A DNA stretch of 64,000 bases from positions 62,001-126,000 of IMG/VR virus record IMGVR_UViG_3300025133_009608. One strand, written 5' to 3'. Positions within the stretch are counted from its first letter, which is position 1. Each line of letters opens with the position of its first letter. The notes below the pieces were generated by a model, which had not been told where the DNA came from, made no database searches, and worked only from the letters and a program-made list of their open reading frames with translations. Shown piece by piece: positions 39,912 to 60,460 of the stretch. A program made the position numbers and the translations under genes.

Positions 39912-39915
39912 CTAA

Positions 39916-41056: not shown

Positions 41057-41085
41057 ATAATAAATCGATATTATTTATATCAAAA
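41057..41085 (-). promoter_or_regulatory. Conserved 29-bp element, copy 1
   Basis: Plus strand ATAATAAATCGATATTATTTATATCAAAA; 28/29 to consensus; upstream of the MoxR gene. Confidence 0.8.
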
Positions 41086-41089
41086 TTTT

Positions 41090-41440
41090 CTATTTCTTCT
41101 CATTACTCGGTGGTAACGGGTTTTCATTTAGCCTTGTGTTTATATCTTGCAATCTTTCTCTAAGACCCTTAAAGGAGTCAATCATAGATCCAAGATCCTG
41201 ATCTCCACCAATAGTGGCTCCGGCCCCAATAGCGCCACCAAAGCTTCCTATAATATCCTTTACTTGATCCATCTTTTCTGGAGTAAGCATTTCATCTACA
41301 CTTGAAAACTCCTTTGTTATATCGGATAGCTTATCTATCTTTTCTCCCATGTCATCGATCTTAGATTCCATTCGATCTAGTCGCTCTAAAATATCCGAAT
41401 ATGATACACAGTCGTCGTTATTTTTCATTTGTTTTTCCAT
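41090..41440 (-). CDS. Hypothetical protein
   Basis: 116-aa helical ORF coupled to the upstream gene. Confidence 0.55.
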   Translation of the reverse strand: MEKQMKNNDDCVSYSDILERLDRMESKIDDMGEKIDKLSDITKEFSSVDEMLTPEKMDQVKDIIGSFGGAIGAGATIGGDQDLGSMIDSFKGLRERLQDINTRLNENPLPPSNEKK

Positions 41441-42511
41441 TTACTTTCTAGTTCCGTAGGCATGAGACTCTGCGAGCCCCGCGTTTGTTATCTTCATAAA
41501 AGAAGCGTTTTCTCTCAGCTCGCTAATAGTCACTGCATTCGCATAACTCATTCCAGATCGAAGCCCTCCCATGAATTCGTCAAGAATATATTTAGCCTTG
41601 CCTTTCACCGGGATATGTGTCGACACTCCCTCGGCGCAAGTCCCCGGCTTCAGCCCTCCTCTTTTATCTTCTTGAATCTCTCTACTTGCAGCGCCACGAT
41701 AGACCTTCATTTTTCTTCCGTCTATATTCACAATGTCACCGGGAGACTCTATCGTTCCAGCAAAAAGCCCTCCAGCCATGATTGCATCGGCTCCAGCTAC
41801 TATGCTCTTAATCATATCTGACGGATACCTTATCCCTCCATCTGCAATTATAGATACATCTTTATAAGATGTATTTTCGGCCCTTGCTCTTTGGCAATCA
41901 ACAATTGTTGATAGCAATGGAACTCCAAACCCCGTCATTATCCGCGTTGAGCAAATCGCTCCAGACCCGATTGACGCCCTAACCGCATTGGCCCCCGCAT
42001 CTGCCAAGTAAGCAAACCCATCGCCGGTTGCTACATTCCCGGCCATTATTTGGTAATTAGAATTATCTTTAATAAACTCAATCATTTCCTTCATCAGTAT
42101 TGAGTGACCATTTGCAATATCAATAGCAACCCAATCAATTATCGAGCCTATTTCATTTTTTAGCGACAAGAACCTTTCTCGACCCTCTCTTCCCACTCCA
42201 ACTGCCGCTACAACTGGGGCTTCATCGGAATGCTCTGATACTTGCCTCAGTGAGGCAATCTGCTCCCCCGTAGAACTAAACCTATGAACAACCCCCATTG
42301 CCCCATGAGAGCCAAGCTCAGAGGCCATTAACGGCCCCGTAACAGTATCCATAGGAGAGGATATCATTGGAACCTCCAACTTGGTGTTTCCAATGAAAGT
42401 TGCAGTGTCAGGAGAGAGTCTGGATCTCACTTCTGAATATGTCGGAACAAGCAAAACATCATCAAATGATAGTCCAGCATTCCAGATAAAGGAGTTCTTT
42501 GAGTTACTCAT
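41441..42511 (-). CDS. IMPDH/GMP-reductase family enzyme without CBS domains, leaning GMP reductase
   Basis: [31 protein letters not shown], catalytic [40 protein letters not shown]; no Arg-Tyr flap dyad seen. Confidence 0.85.
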
Positions 42512-43150
42512 CTAATTCCTATTTGAATAAAAGTTTTGGAATTCTCTAGCGAATTCTTCAGATTTGCCATAAAATCGAAGATTGAGGCAAAACTTATCGA
42601 ACAGGTAGTGTGAAGCCTCATGTGCGATTAGCAGCTCATTATTTCTAGAGCCCCTGTCCGTTAGGAATATCGCCGACTGATTTGGATCAGATGGAATCCC
42701 ATCGTAAAGTCCAAAAAGATTGAACGCCGCCAAATTTCCAACCCCAGCAGAAGATCCCCACTGGTTAAACCTATTGTGATCGTTCAACACATTAGATGAT
42801 ACATGGTATATATCAAGGCTCAAATTCGGCCTACACTCAACTATTCTTACGCCTCTCCTCTCAAGGAATACCACATATTCTGCTATAGTTCTTTGTAAAA
42901 CATTATTCAACAATGTTGATGAGAACGCCCCAGAAGATGCGTAACTCTGACTCTGATGATATAAAGAGTACCTGACTGAGTGGCTTCTGGTCGCCACAGA
43001 GTGATTTCCAGATGAAACAAAGTTTATATCAGAGGTTCCTCGATATGGAAACGCCTCAGAGCCTCCGGGGGCCAGCAATATTAGGGAGATTAATAATCCT
43101 TTAAGTATTTTGCTCATCCGTTTCTCTCCTGTTGTCGCGACGTTTTCCAC
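42512..43150 (-). CDS. Exported protein with HExxH metalloprotease-like motif (likely start MSKILKG)
   Basis: Signal-peptide-like MSKILKGLLISLILLAPGGSEA; LIAHEASHY. Confidence 0.55.
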   Translation of the reverse strand: MENVATTGEKRMSKILKGLLISLILLAPGGSEAFPYRGTSDINFVSSGNHSVATRSHSVRYSLYHQSQSYASSGAFSSTLLNNVLQRTIAEYVVFLERRGVRIVECRPNLSLDIYHVSSNVLNDHNRFNQWGSSAGVGNLAAFNLFGLYDGIPSDPNQSAIFLTDRGSRNNELLIAHEASHYLFDKFCLNLRFYGKSEEFAREFQNFYSNRN

Positions 43151-43301
43151 GGAGAATTTGAACCTCTAAGTCTGGGTTCAAGTCAATCATTCCAACATGA
43201 TTTCTTGGAACCCCGCGATGTTCCCAGTGTGTTTTTGTCACCTTGTTGTATACTTTAATGTTTAAAGTATTTCTTTCATTTCTGCGTCGGTTATCTACCA
43301 T
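43101..43301 (-). CDS. Small hypothetical protein
   Basis: 66-aa co-oriented ORF. Confidence 0.4.
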   Translation of the reverse strand: MVDNRRRNERNTLNIKVYNKVTKTHWEHRGVPRNHVGMIDLNPDLEVQILRGKRRDNRRETDEQNT

Positions 43302-43308
43302 GATCTTC

Positions 43309-44283
43309 CTATTCTAGTTCTTCGATTATTTTATTTAGCCGTCGTGAAAGATTGGGATGCTGAGAAGCCGCAGGGATCAGCCATGGAAGGTTGTTTTTTG
43401 AAAAAACTCCCATTAGACCCTCTACTACTTCGTAGTCTCCCGTATCCACAAAAAGCATAAGCCGCTGCTCAATTTTGGCAATCTCTTTCTTGTTATCATT
43501 TAAGATAATAAGCTGGGCAGGATTTAGGTCGCGCTCCTTTGTCCAATATCCAAATGGATATCTAAGCTGATTCACTCTGGCTACAAAGTTATTAATGAGG
43601 GTTCTTTTCATTGTCTTTGTTCCCCTCTTTGCAACATGAGCCAGTATGTCGGGCGAAACAGCGTTTCTGTCAGACGCTTTTCTGATAATAGAATTCCTTT
43701 CCGAAACGGCGCCTTTCTTTCTGCTTATCCTGTTCCATAGATAATTATAGAAACTAGGATCTTCAGAAGTACTGCTCCCAACGGACTCCCACATGCGATA
43801 TGTTCGAACACTCTGATCTGTCAGGCCATGCCTTGAGATCTCTGAAAGATAATCAAAATCAGTTATTGACCTTGAAATCTCCGCTCTAAGCCGATTTGAT
43901 TCGATCTCAAGATCGACTGAGATGGAGTTATAAATTTTATTGATAATGAATGCTTTTACACTTGGAGTTAACCCTGGAATGTCATCTGAGTTACATCTCA
44001 ATACCTGAGACAAGAGTGCGTCCCTTGCTTCAGGGAGCTGCTCCCACAGGTAGGTGAAGTTTTCTCCGGTCAAAATCTTGAACTCCCCGGAGTTATAATA
44101 ATAACTCCGAGAACAGTCCGCCGTTACTGCCGACTTAACTGCCAACTCATAAAAGGCCTCATCTGGAGTCCAGTTTGAGTGTAGCGAAATTAAATTTAAA
44201 ATATCAACTCTTGAATTTTCTTTTGCCTCTTCCATCTTTACTCTCCCGAGTCCAATCGTGCTTGAAGTCTTTTTGCTATCCAC
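43309..44283 (-). CDS. Helical-repeat (HEAT-like) family protein A
   Basis: C-terminal EQRLMLFVDTGDYEVVEGL...LPWLI similar to the 53606 gene. Confidence 0.55.
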   Translation of the reverse strand: MDSKKTSSTIGLGRVKMEEAKENSRVDILNLISLHSNWTPDEAFYELAVKSAVTADCSRSYYYNSGEFKILTGENFTYLWEQLPEARDALLSQVLRCNSDDIPGLTPSVKAFIINKIYNSISVDLEIESNRLRAEISRSITDFDYLSEISRHGLTDQSVRTYRMWESVGSSTSEDPSFYNYLWNRISRKKGAVSERNSIIRKASDRNAVSPDILAHVAKRGTKTMKRTLINNFVARVNQLRYPFGYWTKERDLNPAQLIILNDNKKEIAKIEQRLMLFVDTGDYEVVEGLMGVFSKNNLPWLIPAASQHPNLSRRLNKIIEELE

Positions 44284-45008
44284 TTGTTTTTCATATTCCT
44301 ATTGCCAAGAAGCATAGGGATGCTGGAAATATTTATCTTGTCTATAAGAACCGAGAATACCGCTCCAGATATTTCTTTTGTCATTTTTGACAACCTTGAG
44401 TATCCCATTGGAGCCAAGTGAACCGCCTGTACTCTAATGTCTTTTGTTTTATCATCTAGCATTTCATCCAGACACTCTACCGTTCCAAGCCTTGAGAACA
44501 CAACCTCTCTTATCTTTGCATCCTTACTTCTCCTTAGCTGCCTCAAGGTATCAATAGTGCAGTATTGAGCCGCAAATAACTGCGCTGGGCCATTAAGATT
44601 TAGGGCGACATCATTTAGGATCGATATATCTTCATATGAAGATGAACGCAGAAGAGATTCAATCATAGTGCCGTAGTTAAAGCTATATCTGCCGGATGAT
44701 GTTTCTGCCTCATTCTCTATTGCCATCTTGATGACTCTGGAGCCAAGTCTCGGATTTGATTTGGCGATAGCCGCGAAAGCCATCTTCGAATACCAATCAT
44801 TTTGTCCCGAAAGAAATGCCCTAGAAAACAACTCTTCGCTTGAAAGAATCTGAAGAAGCGCCTCCTCTTCTGTTTCTGAAAAGATAAAATTTGTCTTCGA
44901 ATAACTTCCAGACCTATAGTTGGCCTCTATGAGCTTTATTCCATTATTTATCTTATCGATTGTGTCGTTTATTTGTTCCGTCATCATATTCAACTCCAAT
45001 AAATTCAT
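44238..45008 (-). CDS. Helical-repeat (HEAT-like) family protein B
   Basis: RSKDAKIR...SRLGTVECLDEMLDDKTKDIR, similar to the 59446 gene. Confidence 0.6.
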   Translation of the reverse strand: MNLLELNMMTEQINDTIDKINNGIKLIEANYRSGSYSKTNFIFSETEEEALLQILSSEELFSRAFLSGQNDWYSKMAFAAIAKSNPRLGSRVIKMAIENEAETSSGRYSFNYGTMIESLLRSSSYEDISILNDVALNLNGPAQLFAAQYCTIDTLRQLRRSKDAKIREVVFSRLGTVECLDEMLDDKTKDIRVQAVHLAPMGYSRLSKMTKEISGAVFSVLIDKINISSIPMLLGNRNMKNKWIAKRLQARLDSGE

Positions 45009-45822
45009 CTATATTATCAACTCTAAATCCTGCGGCCGACCGATGCCCCCCGCCTCCAAAGCTTGAGGCAATCTCTGAAACATCAATTCCATTCTCTCTC
45101 GATCTCAAAGAAACCCTAAACCCGCTTCCATCGAAATAATAAGCCGCCGCAAATGGGCTCCCCTCTGAAAGTTGACCTGCTATTTCCGACTGGAAAAAAG
45201 ATATATTTATAGCCGGAACTTCATAGCCAGCAATATTCATCTTAAAAGAATTCTTAATTAGGCTAGCTATTAGGACATCTTTATACCTTAGAATTCCCCT
45301 TCCGGTACTCACCACCTTTGAATGAGCAGGAGAGTCGCTATCCAATAGAGAGATATGCAGGTCATCCCATGCCTCAAATGTCTTTGGATAAGAATCAATT
45401 GTGGAAAGTATTTCTCTTGAGAAGTCCAACTTCCAATTCCACAAGTCTCTATCTTCAACATGCAGAACGATCGGAGGGACGTTATCTTCTCCGAAAAGAT
45501 ACTTCCAAGAAAGATATGCTCCGGAGTGACTCATGTCAAACTCACAGAAATCCAAATCCCCCAGCTCTTTCTCCGCCGTAATATGATGGTCTATAACGAC
45601 CAATGATTTTGCGGCATCCTTCATCTTCAACAATGTAAGCCGATTATAGGAAAAATCCACAATATATACGGTCTTGCCCTCTATCGGTGGAGGTGGCTCT
45701 CCGTGCTTTGCCGGAATGTACTTGGCTTTATCCCCATACTTTTTCCAAAATGCGAAGGCAGAGCAAAACCCGTCTGGACAATTTGCATGATATAATACAA
45801 CTATATTTTTTTCTTCTTCCAC
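44953..45822 (-). CDS. DHH/DHHA1-family phosphoesterase
   Basis: YHANCPDG, YIVDFS, VIDHH, VEDRDLW, SLRS, GGGGHRSAAGF. Confidence 0.88.
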   Translation of the reverse strand: MEEEKNIVVLYHANCPDGFCSAFAFWKKYGDKAKYIPAKHGEPPPPIEGKTVYIVDFSYNRLTLLKMKDAAKSLVVIDHHITAEKELGDLDFCEFDMSHSGAYLSWKYLFGEDNVPPIVLHVEDRDLWNWKLDFSREILSTIDSYPKTFEAWDDLHISLLDSDSPAHSKVVSTGRGILRYKDVLIASLIKNSFKMNIAGYEVPAINISFFQSEIAGQLSEGSPFAAAYYFDGSGFRVSLRSRENGIDVSEIASSFGGGGHRSAAGFRVDNIDEFIGVEYDDGTNKRHNR

Positions 45823-46842
45823 TTAAATAACCTCTGGAGAGTATGAAAACAATACTTCCTTTACATTAGAGGTATTTTCCTCCAGCTTCCTTTCTATAAA
45901 TACTTTCATCTTAGCCAAGTTTAAAAACTCAATAATAGAATCATTATGGAACAACTTAAACACATTGAATTCTTCAAGTATATCGCACTTGCTTATTACA
46001 AGATGAGTCGTTCCGGTAACTTCTGCGGCATAAATTAGATTATCTAAATTCATCCAATTTACTTTCCTTCTTCTCCCGGTTGTAACTCCATATTCTTTCC
46101 CCAACTCCCCAAGCTCTGATAGCTCCGGATCATCAAGAAGGGACGCCGGGAATCTTGGATCTTCTCCTGAGCGGGTATCGTAAATTTTCGAACACCCCCA
46201 TATCTCATTAATCTTTTGAGGGGCGAATCCCAAACTGCAAGCTGCATAAGGAAGCGTTTCGCTGGAAGTTACATATGGATATAACCCATGATTTACATCA
46301 AGATAAAATCCCTGAGCACCTTCGCATAAAATGTTTCCGGAAAGTCTGCCATTCCAAATTATAGATGAATCCAAAGTTCCGTCTGCAAGTATCCCCGTTC
46401 TTGCATACTTAGAGGCATAAGCCGGAGCAATTCCTTTTGATGTTGTTCCCAACTTTGCCGCAAGGTTCTTTTTATCAAAAGCAATATGTTCGTCTGTAAC
46501 GATATGACAATTTGGATGAACCTTTACCAGAGAGGTATCAAATCCATTTTGATTTAAATAATCGATCTCTTTATAAAAAGACTCCGGATGCAGAACGCAC
46601 CCCGGCCCGATAAGGGATGTTATTCCATGGAAAACTCCGGACGGGATGAGGTGGGTTTGATACTTTTTCCCATCAAGAAATACAGTGTGTCCTGCGTTGT
46701 TTCCTCCGGCCCATCTTGCAACCATATTATAATAACTTGATCCATCAGGGCTCTTCTTTTTTGAAAGGGCAGAGGAGATTTTCCCTTTACCCTCGTCCCC
46801 CCAGCAAAGCCCAACTGCTATATCAACCGAATTAACTGTCAT
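45823..46842 (-). CDS. purA: Adenylosuccinate synthetase (short form)
   Basis: WGDEGKGK, GGNNAGHT, HLIPSG, GTTSKGIAPAY, EGAQG, YPYVTSS, GVTTGRRR. Confidence 0.93.
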   Translation of the reverse strand: MTVNSVDIAVGLCWGDEGKGKISSALSKKKSPDGSSYYNMVARWAGGNNAGHTVFLDGKKYQTHLIPSGVFHGITSLIGPGCVLHPESFYKEIDYLNQNGFDTSLVKVHPNCHIVTDEHIAFDKKNLAAKLGTTSKGIAPAYASKYARTGILADGTLDSSIIWNGRLSGNILCEGAQGFYLDVNHGLYPYVTSSETLPYAACSLGFAPQKINEIWGCSKIYDTRSGEDPRFPASLLDDPELSELGELGKEYGVTTGRRRKVNWMNLDNLIYAAEVTGTTHLVISKCDILEEFNVFKLFHNDSIIEFLNLAKMKVFIERKLEENTSNVKEVLFSYSPEVI

Positions 46843-47398
46843 CAGTTTCTCCTAAAGATTCTTGTGATTCAATCTTCTTTATTTTACTTGGGCGGCGCAG
46901 AAAAGTAATGCCCTCTTTGTGAGAAGATACTGTTGCGGTAAAAGTTATCGTATCGCCGGGACCGAAAGAATAAGCCTTTGTGGTTTTAAAGAAATACTTC
47001 CAACCATTTTGATCTGCCGCCAAAATCGCTGGCATCGGATACTGAGAGTTTCCTTTCGGGTCGCAAATCTTAACAATATTGAATGGGCCAAGATCATATC
47101 TAGTTCCCTCAAGATAGCTCGGGGTATCTAATGATATTGATGTAATTAAAGATTCTGTCCACTTGTTTATTGAGGCAATCCATTTCTCGGACAGCTTGTG
47201 CGGAGACTCTGTAATTATAGATATTGTTTTCTCGATCCAATCATTAGTCTTTCTTCCCCTCTCTCTTGCCAAAAGGGGTACGGCCATCGGATGAATCGCA
47301 TTTAGATTCTTTTCTGACAGCCGACTAATCTCTTCTTTTGATAAACGCTTTTTTCTGCGCCTCTTCTTCGGAGCATTATTGTTGAATATATTAATCAT
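46832..47398 (-). CDS. Hypothetical protein with possible C-terminal OB fold (start revised to MINIF)
   Basis: YFFKTTK..SFGPGDTITFTATVSSH...TFLRRP; ATG at 47398 lies 34 nt downstream of the conserved element. Confidence 0.55.
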   Translation of the reverse strand: MINIFNNNAPKKRRRKKRLSKEEISRLSEKNLNAIHPMAVPLLARERGRKTNDWIEKTISIITESPHKLSEKWIASINKWTESLITSISLDTPSYLEGTRYDLGPFNIVKICDPKGNSQYPMPAILAADQNGWKYFFKTTKAYSFGPGDTITFTATVSSHKEGITFLRRPSKIKKIESQESLGETDDS

Positions 47399-47431
47399 CT
47401 TAAAACAATCTCGGTTGCGGTTCAACTACCA

Positions 47432-47460
47432 ATAATGAATCGAGATTATTTATATCAAAA
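47432..47460 (-). promoter_or_regulatory. Conserved 29-bp element, copy 2
   Basis: ATAATGAATCGAGATTATTTATATCAAAA; 28/29 to consensus. Confidence 0.8.
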
Positions 47461-47481
47461 TTTAATGACGATGATTATATT

Positions 47482-50640: not shown

Positions 50641-50643
50641 ATT

Positions 50644-51450: not shown

Positions 51451-51451
51451 C

Positions 51452-51814: not shown

Positions 51815-51815
51815 T

Positions 51816-52775: not shown

Positions 52776-52777
52776 AT

Positions 52778-53254: not shown

Positions 53255-53291
53255 AATTAATTCATTTCACAATTCAGCGATGAATATTAGC

Positions 53292-53325
53292 AGAAAACCC
53301 CGACAGACATGAGCCTATCGGGGTT
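53292..53325 (-). terminator. Rho-independent terminator
   Basis: Minus-strand 11-bp stem AACCCCGAUAG / CUGUCGGGGUU (one G-U pair) ending in a U run. Confidence 0.7.
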
Positions 53326-53343
53326 GCTTAAAATTGCTTAACT

Positions 53344-53655
53344 TTATTCTTCATCTAGATCAACATGGAGTGCCAAAAACTTATACAAAGAGTCAGAATC
53401 TGTAACCTTCAAGTCCTTTGGAACCTTTTTATATCCCAAGATCATCATTTTTACATCTTGCTCTTCGTAGTCCTTCTCAATGCTGCCTCGTTTTACCGCC
53501 ATTATAGAGCCATCGAAGCTAAGCTTTAAGTTCTCCATTACTGATTCATCCAAGATTTCTTCCTTAAACATATTTTTATGCAAAGGGGTTACTAACCAAG
53601 CGTATTCACTCATCGTCCGGTCCTCCATCTTCGTGCTCTTCCATTCTTCTCTCAA
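53344..53655 (-). CDS. Hypothetical protein (likely start MSEYAW)
   Basis: Co-oriented ORF; the internal ATG overlaps the stop of the 53606 gene. Confidence 0.5.
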   Translation of the reverse strand: MREEWKSTKMEDRTMSEYAWLVTPLHKNMFKEEILDESVMENLKLSFDGSIMAVKRGSIEKDYEEQDVKMMILGYKKVPKDLKVTDSDSLYKFLALHVDLDEE

Positions 53656-54466
53656 TAATTACTTTTGCAGAATAATATTCCGTTCCCATAATTGATGTCA
53701 AAAGGTGTATCGGAAGGCTCTTTGCCAATGTCGTCTGAACCCATTCATGCTTGGAGTCTGAAAACTTTAAAAGAAGATTCTCATACCTTCCTTTATACAA
53801 ATCCCTATGCTTAATAAGAGTCTCAAGTCCAGCATTTGATGCCTCTTCTGAGGCTTCGGACCGAATCTTTCTGGCCTCCTTTTCTGACAAAACCCCGGCG
53901 CTTATATAATGCCTATAAAGAAACCCGCGAACTCTATATCCAAACGAAACCTTGGTCGCCTTATCAAATAAGGCCGAGCGAACAAATAACGGAATAGTGC
54001 TCTCATCCTGCTTTGCCACCCCAGAGGCTATGCTTTCTAATATTCTAGATACATACGAAGTCCTTTCTGCTCTTTTCATTTCCTGAAAAAACAGCGGCTT
54101 CCAATCAAACTTTGGATTCAATCGGGCTGCCGACAAATAAATTGAATCGGAATTCCTAGCGATATGAGTTAGCTTTGTTTCCCCATATTCACATAATTCT
54201 TTAAAATTCGATAGATCGTCGATTATACTTGCCCAAAAAGGTGACTCGTTATATATGTCAACCCCGCCATTAACGAGGCTGGTCATTATTGCCTGTCTCG
54301 CACTTTCTGACAAGTCACTATAATACGGCTCCATTAGATGGAGATTGTTGGAGATAGTTCTCCGCGCAGCCTTGGCCACTTCAGATCTATCATAGGTATA
54401 ATGATTTGGCCGAAACAAACTATCCGTACCATACTTAATGAAAAAGTCTTTTATTTCCTTATTCAT
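53606..54466 (-). CDS. Helical-repeat (HEAT-like) family protein C
   Basis: ENLLLKFSDSKHEWVQTTLAKSLPIHLLTSIMG, similar to the 43309 gene. Confidence 0.55.
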   Translation of the reverse strand: MNKEIKDFFIKYGTDSLFRPNHYTYDRSEVAKAARRTISNNLHLMEPYYSDLSESARQAIMTSLVNGGVDIYNESPFWASIIDDLSNFKELCEYGETKLTHIARNSDSIYLSAARLNPKFDWKPLFFQEMKRAERTSYVSRILESIASGVAKQDESTIPLFVRSALFDKATKVSFGYRVRGFLYRHYISAGVLSEKEARKIRSEASEEASNAGLETLIKHRDLYKGRYENLLLKFSDSKHEWVQTTLAKSLPIHLLTSIMGTEYYSAKVIIERRMEEHEDGGPDDE

Positions 54467-54740
54467 TACAAAGACTCCCCATCAATCTTGTGAATTCTTC
54501 GAGATTCTCATTCAGAATGGAAATCTTAACCGCATCATTCAGAAGCCCCCAGAGCGGCGCGATGTCTTTGAGCGGAAGCCTGGCGAAGCGCACAACATAC
54601 TCTTTTTCATCCCCGCTATAGGAATTAGAGCAAGAGTTGATTCCCTTTGCTATTAGATAATTATATACTTGCTCTACTTCGATCTCAGGAGATTGCTCGT
54701 CCTCTCCCTCAATAAGCCTAATTGATTCTATATTGCTCAT
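54459..54740 (-). CDS. Hypothetical protein
   Basis: AAGGA RBS; first gene after conserved element copy 3. Confidence 0.55.
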   Translation of the reverse strand: MSNIESIRLIEGEDEQSPEIEVEQVYNYLIAKGINSCSNSYSGDEKEYVVRFARLPLKDIAPLWGLLNDAVKISILNENLEEFTRLMGSLCNE

Positions 54741-54774
54741 TCTATATTCCTTTTTTCGATAGGTTCACTGAGGT

Positions 54775-54803
54775 ATAATAAATCGAGATTATTTATATCA
54801 AAA
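54775..54803 (-). promoter_or_regulatory. Conserved 29-bp element, copy 3
   Basis: ATAATAAATCGAGATTATTTATATCAAAA (consensus). Confidence 0.8.
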
Positions 54804-54807
54804 CTTT

Positions 54808-56409
54808 CTATTCCTTGATATCTTCATCATAAATAGCGACTTCAGTAGTTAGAAGTGTTCCGCTGGCAGATGCGGCATGTTCCACTGCCGACCTTACAAC
54901 TTTCACCGGATCAATAACTCCGGACTTTATCATATCTGACTGAAAAGAATTCGTCAGAGCATTATATCCGCAAGTTGTATTTTTTGAGTTTATAATTTTC
55001 TGCATAAACTCATAAGGCTCTACTCCGGCATTGGTCAAGATCTGCTTAAACGGAGCACAAATTGCACGAGATACTATTCCAACTCCAACCGCCTCCTCTG
55101 CAGATAAAGAAGAATCTTTTAATAATTTTTTCAACTCCGGGACGCAATGCAACAGAGCAGCTCCCCCTCCTGGGACGATCCCCTCTTGAATCGCCGCCTG
55201 AACAGCATTTATCGAATCCTCCACTCGATCCTTTCTTTCTCTCATCTCCGCCTCTGACATTCCGCCAACCCTAAGTACCGCAACTGCCCCAGACAGCGTT
55301 GAGAGCCTATGCCGAAGAGATGCAGCCTGATGAGGGAACAGGTCAGAGCTTTCAAGCTGAGACTTTATACCTAGAATCCTAGTCTCCACATCAGCGGAGT
55401 CTCCGCCGCCATCTATTATGGTTGTCTTGTTTCTTGAAATAATTACTTTTCTTGCCGTTCCAAGATCCGAAAGCGATACGCTCCTAAGAGCATTTCCCCC
55501 CTCATTTGTCAGCATTCTCCCGCCACAAATTGTGGCAATATCACCTAACATTTCTGCTCGAATATCTCCAAAGCCAGGAGCCTTCACGGGACAGGAGTCA
55601 AGAGTTCCTCGGGCCTTATTTAAAACAAGAGTCTGCAAGGCCTCTGAGTTTACATCTTTTGCTATAATTACTACTGGCTTCGACGCTTCAGACGCGGCCT
55701 GTAATACAGACAAAAACTCCTGACTAGAAGTAAGGGCATCATCGTATGTAATAATAAATGGATTATCAAACTCAACTGTGAGCTTCTCTTGATTCGTAGA
55801 GAATGCAGGAGAAATATATCCCCTGTCGAATGATAGACCTTCAGTATAAGAGGTCGTTGTTTCTGAGCCAGCCGCCTCTTCTACGGAGATAATTCCATCA
55901 TCCCCAACCGTTGTCACTACCTCTGCGATTAGAGAGCCCAATTCGATATCATTATTCGCAGATATAATTGCAACATCTCTGACCGTATCCGTTCCAGAAA
56001 CCTCTGATGAAATATCTTTCAAAAAAGAGACGACAGTGCTTACTGCTATGTCTATTCCTCTTTTTATCAAAACTGGATTATGCCCAGCGGCAACCATCTT
56101 AGCTCCCTCGGTATAAATCGACTGAGCTAATATGGTTGCCGTTGTTGTTCCGTCACCGGCAACAGAGTTTGTTGATGAGGCAACTGATTTTATGAGCTGA
56201 GCACCCATGTTTTCTATCTTATCCGAAAGACTTATAGAACGAGCAACAGTCACCCCGTCCTTTGTAACCAAAGGGGGGCCGTAAGACCTGTCAATGGCGG
56301 CGTGCCTACCTTTTGGACCTAGAGTTACCTTGACAGCGTTTGCCAAAATATCTAATCCGATTTGCATTCCGCTTCTTGCATCAAGGCCTATCTTTACTTC
56401 TTTGCTCAT
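54808..56409 (-). CDS. groEL: Chaperonin GroEL/Cpn60-like, copy 2 (divergent)
   Basis: KVTLGPKGR, VTKDGVTVA, AGDGTTTATIL, ISANND, FDRGYISP, VKAPGFGD, EGIVPGGG, GVIDPVKV; no GGM tail. Confidence 0.93.
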   Translation of the reverse strand: MSKEVKIGLDARSGMQIGLDILANAVKVTLGPKGRHAAIDRSYGPPLVTKDGVTVARSISLSDKIENMGAQLIKSVASSTNSVAGDGTTTATILAQSIYTEGAKMVAAGHNPVLIKRGIDIAVSTVVSFLKDISSEVSGTDTVRDVAIISANNDIELGSLIAEVVTTVGDDGIISVEEAAGSETTTSYTEGLSFDRGYISPAFSTNQEKLTVEFDNPFIITYDDALTSSQEFLSVLQAASEASKPVVIIAKDVNSEALQTLVLNKARGTLDSCPVKAPGFGDIRAEMLGDIATICGGRMLTNEGGNALRSVSLSDLGTARKVIISRNKTTIIDGGGDSADVETRILGIKSQLESSDLFPHQAASLRHRLSTLSGAVAVLRVGGMSEAEMRERKDRVEDSINAVQAAIQEGIVPGGGAALLHCVPELKKLLKDSSLSAEEAVGVGIVSRAICAPFKQILTNAGVEPYEFMQKIINSKNTTCGYNALTNSFQSDMIKSGVIDPVKVVRSAVEHAASASGTLLTTEVAIYDEDIKE

Positions 56410-56432
56410 TCTATTAGATCTCCTTTTAGTTT

Positions 56433-56687: not shown

Positions 56688-56784
56688 AACTTGATCCTTT
56701 ATAATATTAAAGTAATTTTACCATTTTAACGACTTAATTGCAATTAAAATGATAGGTCATTCTACTTAATTTTTCGAAAAATAA

Positions 56785-57444
56785 TCAACTATTTTCCGAC
56801 CGCAACCTAACCACGCCGTCGGAAATGTCAACCCAACTTGTATGAGCCACCCAATCGCCCGAATTACAGAATGTCTTTATCTCTCCCTTTTCGTCAACCC
56901 AAATTATACATTCTGGGATATGAGAGTGACCTACAATGAGTACATCGACATCGTCATTCCTGTGCAGGATGTCCCATACTCTTCTTAGTTTTCTTTTTTT
57001 AAGCTTACGATTAACATACCATGTAGTTAGATCCCATCCAAATTTTCGCTCCATCCAGTCATGAAAAATCGACAGTATCCTTATCCAAAAGTCCATGTGA
57101 ACAATTCCGGAGTCATACTGATCCCCGTGCTCTATTCTGAATCTTCTCCCACCTTCTTCAAACTCAAATTTATCCACAAAAGAAATCCCCTTTACGGCTT
57201 TGCCGATAAGGGGCTTGAACGAAAAGTCATGATTGCCAACGATATATATTATATCTTTTGAGTAATCTATCGCCTCCAGTATATCTATCGCTCTCTCTGT
57301 AAATAATGGAATCTTAATAAAATCAATTATATCTCCGGCCAAGATTAATTGGTCGTACTCTTCTTTTTTTAAGAAAGAAGCCAAAGCCTTTCCGTTATAA
57401 TGAAGGCTTCCTATGTGAGTGTCAGATATAACTATTCTTTTCAT
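56785..57444 (-). CDS. Calcineurin-like metallophosphoesterase, LpxH/YbbF-like
   Basis: ISDTHIG, AGDIID, VGNHD, EHGDQYD, VGHSHIP, NSGDW. Confidence 0.85.
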   Translation of the reverse strand: MKRIVISDTHIGSLHYNGKALASFLKKEEYDQLILAGDIIDFIKIPLFTERAIDILEAIDYSKDIIYIVGNHDFSFKPLIGKAVKGISFVDKFEFEEGGRRFRIEHGDQYDSGIVHMDFWIRILSIFHDWMERKFGWDLTTWYVNRKLKKRKLRRVWDILHRNDDVDVLIVGHSHIPECIIWVDEKGEIKTFCNSGDWVAHTSWVDISDGVVRLRSENS

Positions 57445-57449
57445 TCTAT

Positions 57450-57809
57450 TTATTCTACTTCATCTGAAGATTCTTCGCTCAAAGAATCCCCCTCTACATC
57501 GGCTGGCGGGTTTTTAATAGCTTCTTCTTTTGCTATTTTCATCTCCTTCTTTTTCTCGGCCCGCTCAATTCTTGATAGCTTTCCGGTTATTCTTTCTGCT
57601 GCAAATGTCAGCTCATCTTCGTCCAACCCTGCGGCAAAAAAGTAAAGAGCAGCCTTTCCGCCCTCAGTTAGTCCCCGCTCCAACTCCTCCAGCCTTGCGG
57701 TTAAAGAGTTAATCTCCATCATTTCTCGAAGAAGCTCCTGGCCGGAGGATAAAAGCTTTTTATCATCTGAGTTATCGATCATGGATCTGAAGTCATCAAG
57801 TCTGGACAT
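57450..57809 (-). CDS. Hypothetical helical protein
   Basis: GAGG RBS; 119 aa. Confidence 0.55.
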   Translation of the reverse strand: MSRLDDFRSMIDNSDDKKLLSSGQELLREMMEINSLTARLEELERGLTEGGKAALYFFAAGLDEDELTFAAERITGKLSRIERAEKKKEMKIAKEEAIKNPPADVEGDSLSEESSDEVE

Positions 57810-57878
57810 ATTTGCCTCTATTAATAATTTGGTCTGAATGGGATTATAGTATTATAATGATAAGGTTTTAGATTTACA

Positions 57879-59363
57879 ATGAAAATTAGCGCAAACTACA
57901 AGAAAGATATACGCAACTTAGGTGAAGCATTTCAGTCTTTAAATATGACGTCTGCCTCTGTAAAGCTTGCTGGAATGCTAAAAACATCTTCCTACGAAAC
58001 GCTCTCCGGGGAACATAACGAGTACCAACTATGGACTTCCGTAATTGACGAGTGTATGAAGCCACCACCCTCGGCAATTCAAACTGCCGCCGAAACATAC
58101 CTAAGGCCCGGCTCAGATGCTATGACAAACACGCCGCCGCCGGAATCTCTGGATCAAGATGAAATAAGAGAGTCTATAGCTATAGTAGAGGAAAACGATA
58201 TAGATCTTGAGAATATATCCACTGCGTGTATAAACTACATGAAAATAGAAAAGAACTTATATAAAACGGCTAGTTTAAATCAAGCCATGTCTTGGCGCAG
58301 AACTATGGAGCTAGCAGCAAGGGCGGCTCTAGAAGAAGCAGAAAGAGTAATGCCAAACTCTATTTCAAAAGAAGAGATAAAGCTAGCATCTGTTCAGGCG
58401 GGGCTTCTCTTTACAAAAGAGCGGCTCGAAAAAAGAGGCTCATGGACCTCTCCAATAAGATGGATTGGAAACAAAGTAAAAGGAGCACTTGGATTAGTAA
58501 AAAGAGCCCTTGGAAGGCTGCTTCCTGTTATTGGAGTGGTCGCCTCTATTTACTTTGCATATGACTCCTGGAAAAAGTGGAGAAAAGAAATAAACTTTAT
58601 ATTTACAGACCTAGACGCTGGAAGCTACGGAATAACTCAGATGGATACATGGTTCGTGTCGGGGCTATCTGAAAAAATAAATTCTGGCTTATCTGACAAA
58701 ATGAACATAACTCTTTCTCCGAGTGAAACTCCAAGCTGCGAAGGGACTTCAGAGTGTGGATGGAAATACGTTGAAGAGCCACCCGAAGAGGTTTCGTTTA
58801 GTGAAATGGTAGAAGATATGGGAGAAATATTTACCGGAGGAGGCGAGATTGTTAGGCCGGAGTTTATCGAAGGTGGATCGCGACCCTTTAGGTCTAATAC
58901 TGGAAACCCATCTGATTTTATATCACTTGCGGCACTAAACACATCATGTGAAGCCATAATGGTTCATGCTTATTATTTGCTAGAAAATATAATTATGGGA
59001 ATTGTAAGCCTCTGGGCGCTGATTGTCGAAATAATTGCAGTTCTTGGAGCAGTAACCGCTCCGATTGCAGGTATAGCCGCAGCAATTGACTTGGTTGTAT
59101 CAACCGCCGCAATGCAACAAGGATGGGCGAGAAGAAAGAAGCTAAGAGCCGGATTTACAAACAATAGAAACTTTATATTTGGCGTTGCAGGAGAGAATCA
59201 GCAAAGGATTAATAGCCTCACTTATGGGTTCAGTATAGAAGAGGCCAGGAATGAAGCTATAAACCAAACTGAACCGGCGAATAATACTCCGGACATTAAC
59301 CTGATGCCAACGGCGATAAGAGGCGGAGTCGCCGCCCTCAGAGCAGCTGCAAGCCTAAGCTAA
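57879..59363 (+). CDS. Only plus-strand gene: 494-aa protein with two hydrophobic regions and K-x-A/S motifs
   Basis: Long ORF divergent from 57809; RLLPVIGVVASIYFAY and IIMGIVSLWALIVEIIAVLGAVTAPIAGIAAAIDLVV; KTSS, KTAS, KLAS. Confidence 0.75.
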   Translation: MKISANYKKDIRNLGEAFQSLNMTSASVKLAGMLKTSSYETLSGEHNEYQLWTSVIDECMKPPPSAIQTAAETYLRPGSDAMTNTPPPESLDQDEIRESIAIVEENDIDLENISTACINYMKIEKNLYKTASLNQAMSWRRTMELAARAALEEAERVMPNSISKEEIKLASVQAGLLFTKERLEKRGSWTSPIRWIGNKVKGALGLVKRALGRLLPVIGVVASIYFAYDSWKKWRKEINFIFTDLDAGSYGITQMDTWFVSGLSEKINSGLSDKMNITLSPSETPSCEGTSECGWKYVEEPPEEVSFSEMVEDMGEIFTGGGEIVRPEFIEGGSRPFRSNTGNPSDFISLAALNTSCEAIMVHAYYLLENIIMGIVSLWALIVEIIAVLGAVTAPIAGIAAAIDLVVSTAAMQQGWARRKKLRAGFTNNRNFIFGVAGENQQRINSLTYGFSIEEARNEAINQTEPANNTPDINLMPTAIRGGVAALRAAASLS

Positions 59364-59474
59364 GTACCAATCAAGCCAGCTCTTTTCCCATTCCTCTTTC
59401 GAGACTTGAAACTTTCTCTTACCTCGAAATATAAAATACAAAACCTTAGCCGCCCGACTCTCCTTGCTTAACAT
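59355..59474 (-). CDS. Unannotated 39-aa ORF MLSKESRAAKVLYFIFRGKRKFQVSKEEWEKSWLDWYLA
   Basis: Strong GGAGGAG RBS 6 nt before the ATG; overlaps the end of the 59446 gene and converges on the plus-strand gene. Confidence 0.45.
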   Translation of the reverse strand: MLSKESRAAKVLYFIFRGKRKFQVSKEEWEKSWLDWYLA

Positions 59475-60267
59475 TAAGTTCTCCTCCATGATGCTGCATC
59501 TTTAGTCGCAGTATCCTGTCCAATTCGCCAGAAATAGTAGAAAGATCCAAATGATACGGAATCTCATCTGCTGGAAGTCTCGCCACAAGTTCCTGAAGAA
59601 TGTGACTATAGCTCCAACCGCCTAGCAGTCCATTATCGTTTGAATTGGTCATTTCATTTCTTATTCTTTCTATGCCGTCTATCGGGGATAAAGTAGAGTT
59701 TATAAGAGCCTCTCTTTTTATCCAGTAGTTAGAATCAGTCACAAGATCATCAGCACAGTTAGCGATTCCAATTCTCTTAATCACAGCACACCTGACAGCG
59801 TAGCTACTATCGCCCATCATCTTTTTCAAAACAGAAACAGGCACAATCTTAGATGCCCTCAGTCTAGCCCTCTGGTCTTTAGACCTAACTCCTCGCTTTG
59901 CAGCACGAAGCATATCTTTTCCACAAGTATTATCCAGAGTTGCCGAAAGAAATAATCCAACAGATTTGTCTATTAGAATGTTCTTGGCCTCAAGAGACAC
60001 ATTACATAAGTCTTTTGTGAGAAAGAATATCAAATAACCATACGGGCGGGGTGAGGAGCGGCTACACACATAGGAGGGGTATTTTATCCAATACTTATTT
60101 GAAACCAGTGCCTTAAGCCTCTTGAGATCACATAGAGCCCATTCCAATATCTTATCGTTGTCAAATGAGCTCCGGTAGGCATAAGACATCACCGCGTCCT
60201 TTCTCGCTCCTTGTACTACTTTTATAAAATCCGTGATAACCCTAGACTGCTTAATCTTTTTTGACAT
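59446..60267 (-). CDS. Helical-repeat (HEAT-like) family protein D
   Basis: RSKDQRAR...KRIGIANCADDLVTDSNYWIK; GGAGGGG RBS; similar to the 44238 gene. Confidence 0.6.
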   Translation of the reverse strand: MSKKIKQSRVITDFIKVVQGARKDAVMSYAYRSSFDNDKILEWALCDLKRLKALVSNKYWIKYPSYVCSRSSPRPYGYLIFFLTKDLCNVSLEAKNILIDKSVGLFLSATLDNTCGKDMLRAAKRGVRSKDQRARLRASKIVPVSVLKKMMGDSSYAVRCAVIKRIGIANCADDLVTDSNYWIKREALINSTLSPIDGIERIRNEMTNSNDNGLLGGWSYSHILQELVARLPADEIPYHLDLSTISGELDRILRLKMQHHGGELNVKQGESGG

Positions 60268-60391
60268 CCCTAAATCCCCTCCTATTGCTCAAGAACAAAC
60301 AATAAACAAGAACACAAACAGTAGACCAATAAGCCGCCGAAGATGCCTTTGAAAATGTTGCCTCTGCTTTTTTAAAAATTCGAGTTCTCAT
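60251..60391 (-). CDS. Possible 46-aa membrane peptide immediately after element copy 4
   Basis: MRTRIFKKAEATFSKASSAAYWSTVCVLVYCLFLSNRRGFRDVKKD; no Shine-Dalgarno sequence. Confidence 0.3.
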   Translation of the reverse strand: MRTRIFKKAEATFSKASSAAYWSTVCVLVYCLFLSNRRGFRDVKKD

Positions 60392-60402
60392 CTTATACAC
60401 CA

Positions 60403-60431
60403 ATAATAAATCGAGATTATTTATATCAAAA
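60403..60431 (-). promoter_or_regulatory. Conserved 29-bp element, copy 4
   Basis: ATAATAAATCGAGATTATTTATATCAAAA, identical to copy 3. Confidence 0.8.
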
Positions 60432-60460
60432 TTTATTGACTACCGAATAGATGCAAGAAA

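What the first reader, a model, noticed from the sequence alone, without database searches (positions are those of the whole stretch)
41057..60431. A 29-bp intergenic element in four near-identical copies heads four operons: candidate phage-specific promoter or regulon
Seen: ATAATAAATCGAGATTATTTATATCAAAA occurs at 41057, 47432, 54775 and 60403. Two copies are identical and two differ by one base. All are intergenic and in the same orientation, 4-30 nt after an upstream stop codon and 12-65 nt before the next minus-strand ATG. On the minus strand it reads TTTTGATA-TAAATAATCTCGATT-TATTAT, i.e. a TTGATA -35-like box and a TATTAT -10-like box. The spacer between them is fully conserved, which ordinary sigma-70 promoters do not need; compare the plain TTGATA-N17-TATAAC promoter at 36424. 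Downstream lie MoxR/VWA/M16, the purA-DHH operon and HEAT-like genes. Inference: this is the recognition site of a phage sigma factor or activator, such as the 18741 or 1-382 products, defining one temporal gene class.
Basis: partly seen in the sequence, partly recalled or inferred. Interest (0 to 1): 0.82.

Follow-up and report, generated by a model that had tools for sequence, protein, structure and literature searches.

The report
Phage promoter family with invariant spacer
The four 29-bp repeats are real and belong to a family of at least 41 near-identical promoter-like elements in an uncultured 317-kb marine jumbo phage, most likely start signals that a phage-specified factor uses to switch on one large class of genes.

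Summary
Four copies (0-1 mismatch) lie at 41057, 47432, 54775 and 60403, all intergenic and all reading on the minus strand; none is expected by chance.

The window is bases 62001-126000 of IMGVR_UViG_3300025133_009608 (316,664 bp). The four copies are "class A" members of a much larger family. The shared element is ATAAATAA[G/T][A/C]TCGATT[C/T]ATTAT, with 41 copies in the 138.6 kb searched:
- 9 are class A, preceded by TTTTGAT.
- 32 are class B, preceded by cTTCC or CTCG and lying before small ORFs at contig 160-192 kb.
- 40 of 41 sit 2-128 nt (median 25) upstream of a co-oriented start codon.

A relative keeps the 23-nt box 99% identical at orthologous sites, while flanks are 76% identical and the "-10" hexamer 71%. 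More distant relatives carry other lineage-specific boxes, or canonical sigma70-type promoters, at the same sites.

Best reading: promoters of the sigma70-family type whose invariant "spacer" is the docking site of a phage-specified factor, comparable to T4 middle promoters. However, TTGATA is not the shared element, it lies 15 nt (not 17) from TATTAT, and no trans factor is identified. No RNA data were available.

The parts
41057..41087 (-). Class A promoter-like element, copy 1 (AATTTTGATATAAATAATATCGATTTATTAT). It lies 4 nt after the stop of the 116-aa ORF and 64 nt before the ATG of the MoxR-like AAA gene.
41029..41050 (-). Stem-loop CTGAGCGGGTCGCCCTGCTCAG. It begins at the 7th nt after TATTAT of copy 1. 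It is a predicted 5'-proximal leader hairpin (-16 kcal/mol in a 50-nt fold) with no T-run after it.
47432..47462 (-). Class A element, copy 2 (…GATTCATTAT). It lies 21 nt after the stop of the 1052-aa ORF and 33 nt before the ATG at 47398 of a 188-aa ORF, followed by purA-like and DHH genes.
54775..54805 (-). Class A element, copy 3. It lies 4 nt after the GroEL stop and 34 nt before a 93-aa ORF.
60403..60433 (-). Class A element, copy 4. It lies 29 nt after the stop of the 148-aa ORF and 11 nt before a conserved 46-aa ORF.
60251..60391 (-). Small 46-aa ORF with a hydrophobic segment, directly downstream of copy 4. It overlaps the start of the 273-aa gene, is conserved in relatives, and is called as a gene there.
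   Evidence: L028 4140-4280, L029 4630-4770
38703..40992 (-). Unit downstream of copy 1: MoxR-like AAA_5 ATPase (39916-40992) and a DUF2201 metallopeptidase/VWA-like protein (38703-39911). A terminator-like hairpin plus T-run follows at 38656-38702.
41090..47398 (-). Unit downstream of copy 2: a 188-aa ORF, adenylosuccinate synthetase-like (45823-46842), DHH/DHHA1 (44953-45822) and further ORFs down to the 116-aa ORF that ends 4 nt before copy 1.
53255..54740 (-). Unit downstream of copy 3: ORFs of 93, 286 and 103 aa. It ends at a terminator-like hairpin with a T-run in the 53255-53343 intergenic region.
18741..19571 (-). Candidate trans factor, not shown to act on the element. A 276-aa ECF-like sigma-70-family protein (TIGR02937, regions 2 and 4) with a Cys-rich insert.
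1..382 (-). Candidate trans factor, not shown to act on the element. A protein with only a sigma region-4-type HTH. It starts at the ATG at 382, runs off the window, and is 144 aa in the full contig.
36424..36452 (-). Comparator: an ordinary-looking sigma70-type site, TTGATA-N17-TATAAC, before the 103-aa ORF. It lacks the conserved box.

Best explanation
The four elements are promoters. They are the class A members of a genome-wide family of at least 41 near-identical promoters in a marine jumbo phage.

Proposed mechanism:
- Host core RNA polymerase carrying a sigma-70-family sigma contacts the yATTAT hexamer as a -10 element. The sigma may be the host primary sigma or a phage sigma.
- Transcription starts about 7-9 nt downstream, at a conserved T-G-(A/T).
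- The invariant 16-bp box ATAAATAA[G/T][A/C]TCGATT occupies about -28 to -13. It is recognised by a phage-lineage-specific protein: an activator, a sigma-appropriation-type partner, or the region-4 module of a phage sigma.
- In class B this protein replaces the missing -35 contact. In class A it supplements a mis-spaced TTGATA.
- The box thereby ties about 40 transcription units into one temporal class. These include small early-type ORFs, tRNAs, nucleotide-metabolism genes, chaperone genes and probably sigma genes.

Shown: existence, copy number, placement, orientation, the two classes, and purifying selection on the box.
Inferred: promoter activity, the start-site position, the polymerase, and the existence and identity of the factor.
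For: 1. Family size and discreteness. The pattern ATAAATAANNTCGATTNNTTAT has 32 exact copies. There are 41 copies with 3 or fewer mismatches in the 138.6 kb searched, with few and dissimilar matches at 4-5 mismatches. None lies in contig 52-103 kb or 192-205 kb.
2. Behaviour as a transcription signal. 39 copies are on the minus strand. The 2 on the plus strand precede plus-strand genes in divergent regions. 40 of 41 have a co-oriented start codon 2-128 nt downstream, median 25, usually with a Shine-Dalgarno sequence. In a relative, one copy sits 15 nt before a tRNA gene.
3. Selection. At four orthologous sites in a relative (proteins 44-86% identical), the 23-nt box is 91/92 identical and the flanks 76%. 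The same relative has 18 class B copies with an identical 22-nt core in 12 kb.
4. Sigma70-type ancestry.
   - At the orthologous post-GroEL site, relatives have TGC-TACTAT (L057, same spacing to the conserved TGAACC leader), TACTAT (L056) and TTGAAT-N16-TATTTT (L055).
   - The pre-MoxR site in L055 is TTGATA-N16-TACTAT with TGn.
   - The L050 phage has 16 promoters built as box ACATTTCTAATCTTTA, then N8-9, then (TGC/TAC)TATTAT.
5. Need for a factor. Class B has no -35-like hexamer and no TGn. Class A has a 15-nt spacing.
6. Gene content.
   - The phage encodes an ECF-like sigma, an RpoH-like sigma and a region-4-only protein.
   - No single-subunit polymerase was found by Pfam or PHROGs in the long ORFs, or by tblastn with T7 RNAP.
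   - Jumbo phages that encode sigma factors generally lack their own polymerase (PMC7824862).
7. Known precedent. About 60 T4 middle promoters combine a sigma70 -10 with a phage-specific box that replaces -35. They drive tRNAs, nucleotide metabolism and transcription factors (PMC2988021).
Against: - No transcript data. No RNA run was listed for this phage, so the start site and promoter activity are inferred.
- The two hexamer positions that would be -12 and -11 are the least conserved of the core. All class A copies of the close relative read CGTTAT or CCTTAT. One class B copy in each phage reads CGTTAT or CCTTAT. Loss of A(-11) is hard to reconcile with ordinary sigma70-type -10 recognition.
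- Conservation is continuous over 22-30 nt rather than bipartite.
- If transcription starts 7-9 nt after TTAT, the Shine-Dalgarno sequence begins only 2-5 nt from the 5' end in many class B units.
- No factor gene has been identified. MotA or AsiA homologues were not searched for systematically.
- Only about 47% of the genome could be read.
Confidence: 0.55

Rival explanations
1. The element is the promoter of a phage-encoded non-host RNA polymerase, either T7-like single-subunit or another kind. That polymerase would recognise one contiguous sequence of about 23-30 bp and start at the purines directly after TATTATA.
For: - Conservation is continuous rather than bipartite, and the positions that would be -12/-11 of a sigma70 hexamer are variable.
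- The class B core CGATTCATTATAGG matches the T7 promoter core CGACTCACTATAGG at 12 of 14 positions in the register that puts GG at +1. The T7 promoters were read from NC_001604.
- A start at that point would give more ordinary 5' leaders ahead of the Shine-Dalgarno sequence.
Against: - Scored with a matrix built from the 17 T7 promoters, the class B consensus reaches only 0.9 bits, and 2.2% of shuffles do as well.
- No RNA polymerase domain was found in any long ORF examined.
- tblastn with T7 RNAP gives no hit better than E=1 in about 148 kb of this genome and about 170 kb from relatives.
- The phage carries two sigma genes and a region-4 protein.
- Orthologous sites in relatives are bipartite with TGn plus TAyTAT.
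- Class A copies have C, G or T at the would-be +1 position.
Confidence: 0.13
2. These are strong early promoters read by the host sigma70 holoenzyme alone. The extra conservation reflects optimisation for the unknown host's polymerase and recent spread of promoter cassettes, as with T4 'über' early promoters and PeSL cassettes.
For: - The elements lie before many small early-type ORFs, including ArdC-like and CCA-adding enzyme genes and tRNAs, at about 0.5-1 kb intervals.
- Several copies share identical 25-45-nt leaders, which points to cassette duplication.
- The phage sigma genes appear to lie downstream of these promoters rather than upstream.
- T4 early promoters show consensus beyond -35 and -10 (PMC2988021). 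PeSL cassettes spread by recombination (PMC4122927).
Against: - Class B has no -35, no TGn and C at -12. Class A has a 15-nt spacing.
- The box stays 99% identical at orthologous sites whose flanks are 76% identical, which duplication alone does not explain.
- Relatives with different boxes have the same kind of -10, so the box is lineage-specific rather than a general host optimum.
Confidence: 0.12
3. The invariant box is an operator. A phage repressor binds between the -35 and -10 positions of about 40 promoters and shuts the class off together, for example early-gene shut-off.
For: - The box sits where repressors typically occlude polymerase.
- One asymmetric sequence is dispersed over many promoters.
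- It is strongly conserved between relatives.
Against: - Without the box, class B promoters have almost no recognisable polymerase contacts upstream of -10, so positive control is the simpler reading.
- No repressor candidate has been identified.
- The two roles are not mutually exclusive.
Confidence: 0.1
4. This is a -10-only promoter of the T4-late type. The embedded (T)ATAAATA would be read by a minimal phage sigma, the start would fall inside TCGATT, and the rest would be a conserved 5' leader.
For: - Class A contains TATAAATA exactly and class B contains ATAAATA. That TATAAATA is the T4 late promoter is from my own knowledge, not from a tool result.
- The window sigma is divergent.
Against: - Orthologous or analogous promoters in relatives (L057, L050, L052, L055) have no TATAAATA at that position but do keep TAyTAT or TAATAT further downstream.
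- The structural-gene region (contig 192-205 kb) lacks the element.
Confidence: 0.05

Closest known systems
Bacteriophage T4 middle promoters (MotA box plus sigma70 -10; sigma appropriation by AsiA/MotA)
   Same: - Dozens of promoters per genome combine a sigma70-type -10 with a phage-specific upstream box that takes the place of -35.
- They drive tRNAs, nucleotide metabolism, replication genes and the factors for the next temporal class (PMC2988021; PMC6755090).
   Different: - The box sequence is unrelated to (a/t)(a/t)(a/t)TGCTTtA.
- It is 16 bp long and abuts the hexamer, rather than 9 bp centred at -30 and 12±1 bp from -10.
- It is essentially invariant, whereas MotA tolerates many changes.
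- T4 middle promoters need an excellent -10, while here the first two hexamer positions vary.
- No MotA or AsiA homologue has been identified, and the phage is not T4-like (it has a DnaE-type polymerase).
T4-type early promoters and PeSL (promoter-early stem-loop) cassettes
   Same: - Highly similar promoter cassettes are repeated before many small ORFs in plastic genome regions.
- Identical promoter-plus-leader modules sit in front of unrelated genes (PMC2839356, PMC4122927).
   Different: - PeSLs are composite terminator/promoter units with canonical UP/-35/TGn/-10 signals.
- Here no terminator hairpin precedes the window copies, and class B lacks -35 and TGn.
- Recombination at these elements has not been tested.
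T7-group single-subunit RNA polymerase promoters (class II/III)
   Same: - A contiguous, nearly invariant element of about 23 bp, present in two classes and placed directly before genes.
- 12 of 14 identity in the core, and purines at the would-be +1 position.
   Different: - No cognate polymerase gene was found.
- The similarity is only marginally above chance (2.2% of shuffles).
- Relatives show bipartite sigma70-type architecture at the same sites.
Promoters of phage-encoded sigma factors (for example SPO1 gp28 and gp33/34, phiEco32 gp36; cited from my own knowledge)
   Same: - The phage encodes its own sigma-family proteins.
- A phage-specific promoter consensus defines a temporal class.
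   Different: - Those promoters are bipartite or -10-only, with non-conserved spacers.
- Here the spacer is the most conserved part.
- Which sigma, if any, reads the element is unknown.

Membership tests
Canonical sigma70-type (-35/-10) promoter | -35 hexamer resembling TTGACA | tested here: inconclusive
   Class A has TTGATA (5 of 6). The 32 class B copies have cTTCC or CTCG and no -35-like hexamer in any register of 15-18 nt.
Canonical sigma70-type (-35/-10) promoter | Spacer of 17±1 bp with no sequence requirement | tested here: not met
   The spacer is 15 nt and essentially invariant. The consensus scan with spacers of 16-18 does not call the sites.
Canonical sigma70-type (-35/-10) promoter | -10 hexamer TAnnnT with conserved A(-11) and T(-7) | tested here: inconclusive
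   TATTAT or CATTAT occurs in most copies, and TACTAT or TATTTT at orthologous sites of relatives. However, all class A copies of the close relative read CGTTAT or CCTTAT, and so does one class B copy per genome.
Canonical sigma70-type (-35/-10) promoter | Transcription start 5-9 nt downstream of the -10 hexamer | not testable with these tools
   No RNA run was listed. Conserved TG(A/T) at 8-10 nt and leader hairpins starting at 6-13 nt are compatible but not decisive.
T4 middle promoter / sigma appropriation | MotA box (a/t)(a/t)(a/t)TGCTTtA centred at -30, 12±1 bp from -10 | tested here: not met
   The box here is ATAAATAA[G/T][A/C]TCGATT and lies directly adjacent to the hexamer. The T4 consensus is taken from PMC2988021.
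T4 middle promoter / sigma appropriation | MotA and AsiA homologues encoded by the phage | not tested
   Only about 45 ORFs were scanned against Pfam or PHROGs, and none hit these families. Small ORFs and 53% of the genome were not examined.
T7-like single-subunit RNAP promoter | Contiguous conserved element of about 23 bp running through +1, resembling the family consensus | tested here: inconclusive
   Conservation is contiguous, and the core matches T7 at 12 of 14 positions. The T7 matrix score is 0.9 bits, reached by 2.2% of shuffles.
T7-like single-subunit RNAP promoter | Cognate single-subunit RNA polymerase gene in the genome | tested here: inconclusive
   None was found in about 148 kb of 317 kb, nor in about 170 kb from relatives (Pfam and PHROGs; tblastn with T7 RNAP). 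The remaining 53% of the genome could not be read.
PeSL cassette (T4-type phages) | Composite unit: a stem-loop terminator immediately followed by an early promoter | tested here: not met
   For the four window copies, no terminator-like hairpin lies between the upstream stop codon and the element. Class B copies were not examined systematically.
PeSL cassette (T4-type phages) | Copies mark the boundaries of insertions, deletions or replacements between close relatives | not tested
   Gene order around class B differs between the phage and its relative, but breakpoints were not mapped.
T4 late promoter (gp55) | TATAAATA at -10 as the only conserved element, before late genes | tested here: not met
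   TATAAATA is embedded in class A, but conservation extends 14 or more nt further. Relatives lack it at orthologous sites, and the tail-fibre/structural-like region lacks the element.

The most novel reading that the evidence does not exclude
The invariant 16-bp box is the recognition site of a previously undescribed phage transcription specificity factor. This would be a sigma-appropriation-like activator or an unusual sigma module that reads the promoter "spacer". It would belong to a large, uncultured clade of marine jumbo phages. Each lineage carries its own box (ATAAATAAGATCGATT; ACATTTCTAATCTTTA; TTTTMCCAAAAAAAATCTCA). Box and factor would therefore co-evolve as a private promoter code that insulates about 40-60 transcription units from the host and from co-infecting relatives.
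Probability: 0.3. Interest if true: 0.7.

Novelty: new variant of a known kind. Interest (0 to 1): 0.5.

Why it matters
- **Annotation.** Conserved, phage-specific promoter classes are known from a handful of model phages. Here one can be read directly from the sequence of an uncultured 317-kb marine phage. Its clade is represented by hundreds of metagenomic contigs, many of 200-350 kb. The element gives a map of transcription units and a likely temporal class without cultivation.
- **Mechanism.** The part ordinary promoters leave free, the spacer, is the part under the strongest selection, and it changes as a block between lineages. This points to a trans factor with an unusual mode of promoter recognition.
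- **Testability and use.** The prediction can be tested in a heterologous host: a reporter plus candidate phage proteins. If confirmed, it would add an orthogonal promoter/factor pair of practical interest.

Tried and rejected
- **RNA evidence.** Two searches for sequencing runs gave no RNA run, only marine DNA metagenomes.
- **Known RNAs.** Rfam at gathering thresholds and tRNA scans of the window found nothing. The motif has no predicted RNA structure: 0.0 kcal/mol for class A and -1.3 for class B.
- **Cultured relatives.** blastn against INPHARED phages found no match. DnaE tblastn hits were at most 34% identical.
- **Long unannotated ORFs.** The ORFs of 2216, 1052, 929, 777, 499 and 450 aa had no Pfam or PHROG hit. 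The four longest also gave no PDB sequence hit. The ESM Atlas gave nothing for the 2216-aa protein.
- **Catalytic-motif search.** A regular-expression search for polymerase catalytic motifs was uninformative.
- **Metagenome scan.** The exact 22-nt box returned only this phage plus single chance hits inside genes.
- **Leader hairpins.** Start positions range from 1 to 13 nt after TTAT. They do not discriminate between start-site models.
- **Alternative registers.** Reading TTTG…TAnnTTTG as a Bacteroidota-type promoter was rejected because class B lacks TTTG and the genes use strong Shine-Dalgarno sequences. A sigma32-type reading was considered but gave only partial matches.
- **A third repeat.** TTGGGCAAAAA(G/C)TT was examined as a possible sigma70 early promoter. 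It has no consistent -10 partner.

Full report
**1. The observation**

The 29-mer occurs four times in the window, at 41057, 47432, 54775 and 60403. Two copies are exact and two have one mismatch. No match appears in 100 dinucleotide-preserving shuffles, even with three mismatches allowed.

All genes around the copies are on the minus strand. Read on that strand, the element is (A)AATTTTGATATAAATAAT[C/A]TCGATT[T/C]ATTAT. The copies lie 4, 21, 4 and 29 nt after a stop codon. They lie 64, 33, 34 and 11 nt before the next ATG.

The family is discrete. Copies have 0-2 mismatches to a 31-mer consensus, and the next-best matches have 9-10. A standard sigma70 scan with spacers of 16-18 therefore does not report these sites.

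**2. Source and true size of the family**

An exact-pattern scan of IMG/VR placed the window at bases 62001-126000 of IMGVR_UViG_3300025133_009608. This is a 316,664-bp contig from a marine metagenome. The scan found three more copies outside the window, all on the minus strand.

Requiring only the 3' two-thirds of the element (ATAAATAANNTCGATTNNTTAT) raised the count to 32 exact copies. A mismatch-tolerant scan covered the 138.6 kb then held (contig 62001-162094 and 166590-205054). It found 41 copies with three or fewer mismatches. Another 9.6 kb (52-62 kb) has none.

| Class | Copies | Sequence | Location |
|---|---|---|---|
| B | 32 | (a)aCTTCC or CTCG-ATAAATAAGATCGATT[C/T]ATTAT-AG..A.GTG.A.GGAG | contig 160-192 kb, every 0.3-1.5 kb, before small ORFs |

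The TTGATA "-35" therefore marks only a minority of the family.

**3. Evidence that it is a transcription signal**

- Thirty-nine copies are on the minus strand, like their downstream genes.
- The two plus-strand copies (contig 160337 and 171463) precede plus-strand genes in divergent intergenic regions.
- Forty of 41 copies have a co-oriented start codon 2-128 nt downstream of TTAT, median 25 nt. Most have a GGAG-type Shine-Dalgarno sequence.
- In a relative, one copy lies 15 nt before a tRNA gene.
- The element has no predicted RNA structure and no Rfam match.

In the window, the four copies head these units:
- copy 1: MoxR-like AAA and DUF2201/VWA-like genes, followed by a terminator-like hairpin at 38656-38702;
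- copy 2: a 188-aa ORF, purA-like, DHH and further ORFs;
- copy 3: three small ORFs, ending at a terminator-like hairpin at 53255-53343;
- copy 4: a conserved 46-aa ORF and a 273-aa gene.

**4. Comparative evidence**

The 1052-aa protein upstream of copy 2 has only three homologues in the protein collection. Their contigs are syntenic with the window.

The closest relative is called relative B here. Its proteins are 44-86% identical to the window's. At four orthologous sites it keeps TTTTGA[T/G]ATAAATAATCTCGATT. Conservation at those sites is uneven:

| Segment | Identity |
|---|---|
| 23-nt box | 91/92 (99%) |
| 60-nt flanks | 76% |
| "-10" hexamer | 17/24 (71%) |

The hexamer changes in concert, from TATTAT to CGTTAT or CCTTAT. 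The same relative has 18 class B copies with an identical 22-nt core in one 12-kb contig.

Searches with the CCA-adding enzyme and GroEL revealed a large clade of related metagenomic phages. Many contigs are 200-350 kb, with G+C of 36-64% in the loci read. More distant members do not have this box. They have their own:
- The L050/L055 phage has 16 promoters in 21 kb built as TTTGGG(TGT/GAG)AAAA…ACATTTCTAATCTTTA, then N8-9, then (TGC/TAC)TATTAT…TGTAACC.
- L052 has GGCATAATATAGGTAGAG four times.

The orthologous class A positions in these phages look like ordinary or extended -10 sigma70 promoters:
- L057 has TTTTCCCAAAAAAAATCTCA-TGC-TACTAT. The distance from AATCTC to the conserved leader TGAACC is exactly that of the window copy.
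- L056 has TACTAT.
- L055 has TTGAAT-N16-TATTTT after GroEL, and TTGATA-N16 (including TGC)-TACTAT before the MoxR-like gene.

The family thus descends from sigma70-type promoters. In the lineage of the window phage, the region from about -28 to -13 has become fixed to one sequence in every member.

**5. Mechanism**

The best-supported reading is a promoter read by a multi-subunit polymerase with a sigma70-family sigma contacting yATTAT. The invariant box would serve as the docking site of a phage-specified protein.

Arguments for this reading:
- Class B lacks any -35 or TGn. Class A has a mis-spaced -35, so both should be weak on their own.
- The box is under stronger constraint than the coding flanks, and it changes as a block between lineages.
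- The phage encodes sigma-family proteins: an ECF-like 276-aa sigma with a Cys-rich insert (window 18741-19571), an RpoH-like 306-aa sigma (contig 137067-137987), and a 144-aa protein with only a region-4 HTH (window 1-382 and beyond).
- No polymerase gene turned up.
- Jumbo phages with sigma factors generally lack their own polymerase (PMC7824862).

The closest functional precedent is the T4 middle promoter. There a MotA box replaces -35 and the sigma70 -10 is retained. About 60 such promoters drive tRNAs, nucleotide-metabolism genes and the regulators of the next class (PMC2988021). The gene content downstream of class A and B is similar: tRNAs, CCA-adding enzyme, purA-like, a PP-loop ATPase, chaperone-related genes and probably the RpoH-like sigma.

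The predicted start is at the conserved T-G-(A/T), 8-10 nt after TTAT. Strong leader hairpins begin 6-13 nt after TTAT, including the one right after copy 1. These hairpins are compatible with that start but not decisive.

**6. What does not fit**

- The two bases that would be -12 and -11 are the most variable of the core. A(-11) is absent from every class A copy of relative B, and from one otherwise perfect class B copy in each phage. This is unexpected for sigma70-type -10 recognition.
- Conservation is continuous rather than bipartite.
- A start 7-9 nt after TTAT leaves only 2-5 nt ahead of the Shine-Dalgarno sequence in many class B units.

These points keep alive a rival: a promoter for an unrecognised phage polymerase. 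The class B core matches the T7 promoter core at 12 of 14 positions, in the register that puts GG at +1. Scored against the 17 annotated T7 promoters, however, the resemblance is reached by 2.2% of shuffles. There is also no polymerase gene in the 47% of the genome that could be read.

Other rivals:
- host sigma70 alone, with cassette spread in the manner of PeSL elements (PMC4122927);
- an operator for a global shut-off repressor;
- a T4-late-type TATAAATA promoter, which is contradicted by relatives that lack TATAAATA at the orthologous sites.

**7.

It is partly supported. The element is very probably a promoter that defines a co-regulated class, and the conserved spacer is the feature that calls for a phage factor. 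However:
- the regulon is ten times larger than described and comes in two classes;
- TTGATA is not the common denominator;
- the spacing is 15 nt;
- TATTAT is the least conserved part;
- nothing links the element specifically to the 18741 sigma or the 1-382 HTH protein.

By gene order, these sigma genes lie downstream of promoters of this or other classes. That makes them more likely to be regulators of later classes.

**8. Novelty and score**

Phage-specific promoter classes, activator boxes that replace -35, and repeated promoter cassettes are all known kinds. This is a new variant for three reasons: the spacer is the invariant part, the box is lineage-specific, and it occurs in an uncultured and apparently widespread marine jumbo-phage clade.

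Interest is moderate (0.5). It is a clean regulon that can be tested directly, with an unresolved recognition mechanism, but it is not a categorically new kind of element.

Noticed in passing
window 21289-24816 (-): The 1175-aa SbcC/SMC-like ATPase carries an intein with a LAGLIDADG homing-endonuclease domain (Pfam Intein_splicing and LAGLIDADG_3). The SbcD-like phosphoesterase gene lies next to it at 24820-25983.
   Followed up: no
window 54808-56409 (-) and 2668-4314 (-): The phage encodes two Cpn60/GroEL-family chaperonins, of 533 aa and 548 aa. The first has homologues at 57-86% identity on many metagenomic contigs of 200-350 kb. This marks a large uncultured marine jumbo-phage clade.
   Followed up: partly
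L003:10001-10921 (contig 137067-137987, outside the window): A 306-aa sigma factor whose best match is RpoH/sigma-32 (TIGR02392, E=2e-48, below the equivalog cut-off). A heat-shock-type sigma sitting in a phage that also carries chaperonins is notable.
   Followed up: partly
window 37046-37063 (-), inside the ThyX-like ORF; also contig 160095, 160286, 171354, 171422, 175033, 178167, 186026 (-) and 182775 (+): A third repeated motif, TTGGGCAAAAA(G/C)TT(G/T/A)AC. It mostly lies at variable distance upstream of class A or B promoters, or in divergent intergenic regions. In the L050 relative, a similar TTTGGG(TGT/GAG)AAAA box precedes every promoter at a fixed distance. Its function is unknown.
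   Followed up: partly
contig 188880 and 188813 (L046); L053:135/206 and 4632/4716: Tandem class B promoters 67-84 nt apart. In the main phage, the first is followed after about 20 nt by a GCAG-CAA-CTGC hairpin plus T-run. It could therefore produce a very short transcript, or be a decayed unit.
   Followed up: no
L053:4499-4560: In the close relative, a class B promoter sits 15 nt upstream of a tRNA gene (GGGTTGCTAGCTCAGTTGGTAGAGC…). It keeps the conserved AGAGATATGAGAG sequence even though no Shine-Dalgarno sequence is needed. Part of the downstream conservation is therefore promoter- or leader-related rather than translational.
   Followed up: no
contig 126671-126854, 135463-135790 and 142467-142595 (L010, L003, L011): These intergenic stretches contain tRNA-like sequences. 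One has an end resembling a tRNA or tmRNA acceptor arm. Seen only by eye; no tRNA scan was run on these loci.
   Followed up: no
window 10726-17376 (-): A 2216-aa ORF with no Pfam, PHROG or PDB match and no informative ESM Atlas neighbour. It lies between the DnaE gene and the sigma gene.
   Followed up: partly
contig about 192-205 kb (L047:1-12100): The region upstream of the class B cluster lacks the element. It encodes proteins with weak PHROG matches to tail-fibre, baseplate and endolysin families, plus an Ig-like domain protein. Its intergenic regions contain AT-rich TATAAT-like motifs (for example tagTATAATagc and tatTATAATaac). These may be a different, possibly late, promoter class.
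   Followed up: partly
relatives L050/L055 (G+C 50% and 39% in two loci of one 345,675-bp scaffold), L052 (64%), L056 (36%): G+C content differs widely between related phages, and even between two regions of one scaffold.
   Followed up: no
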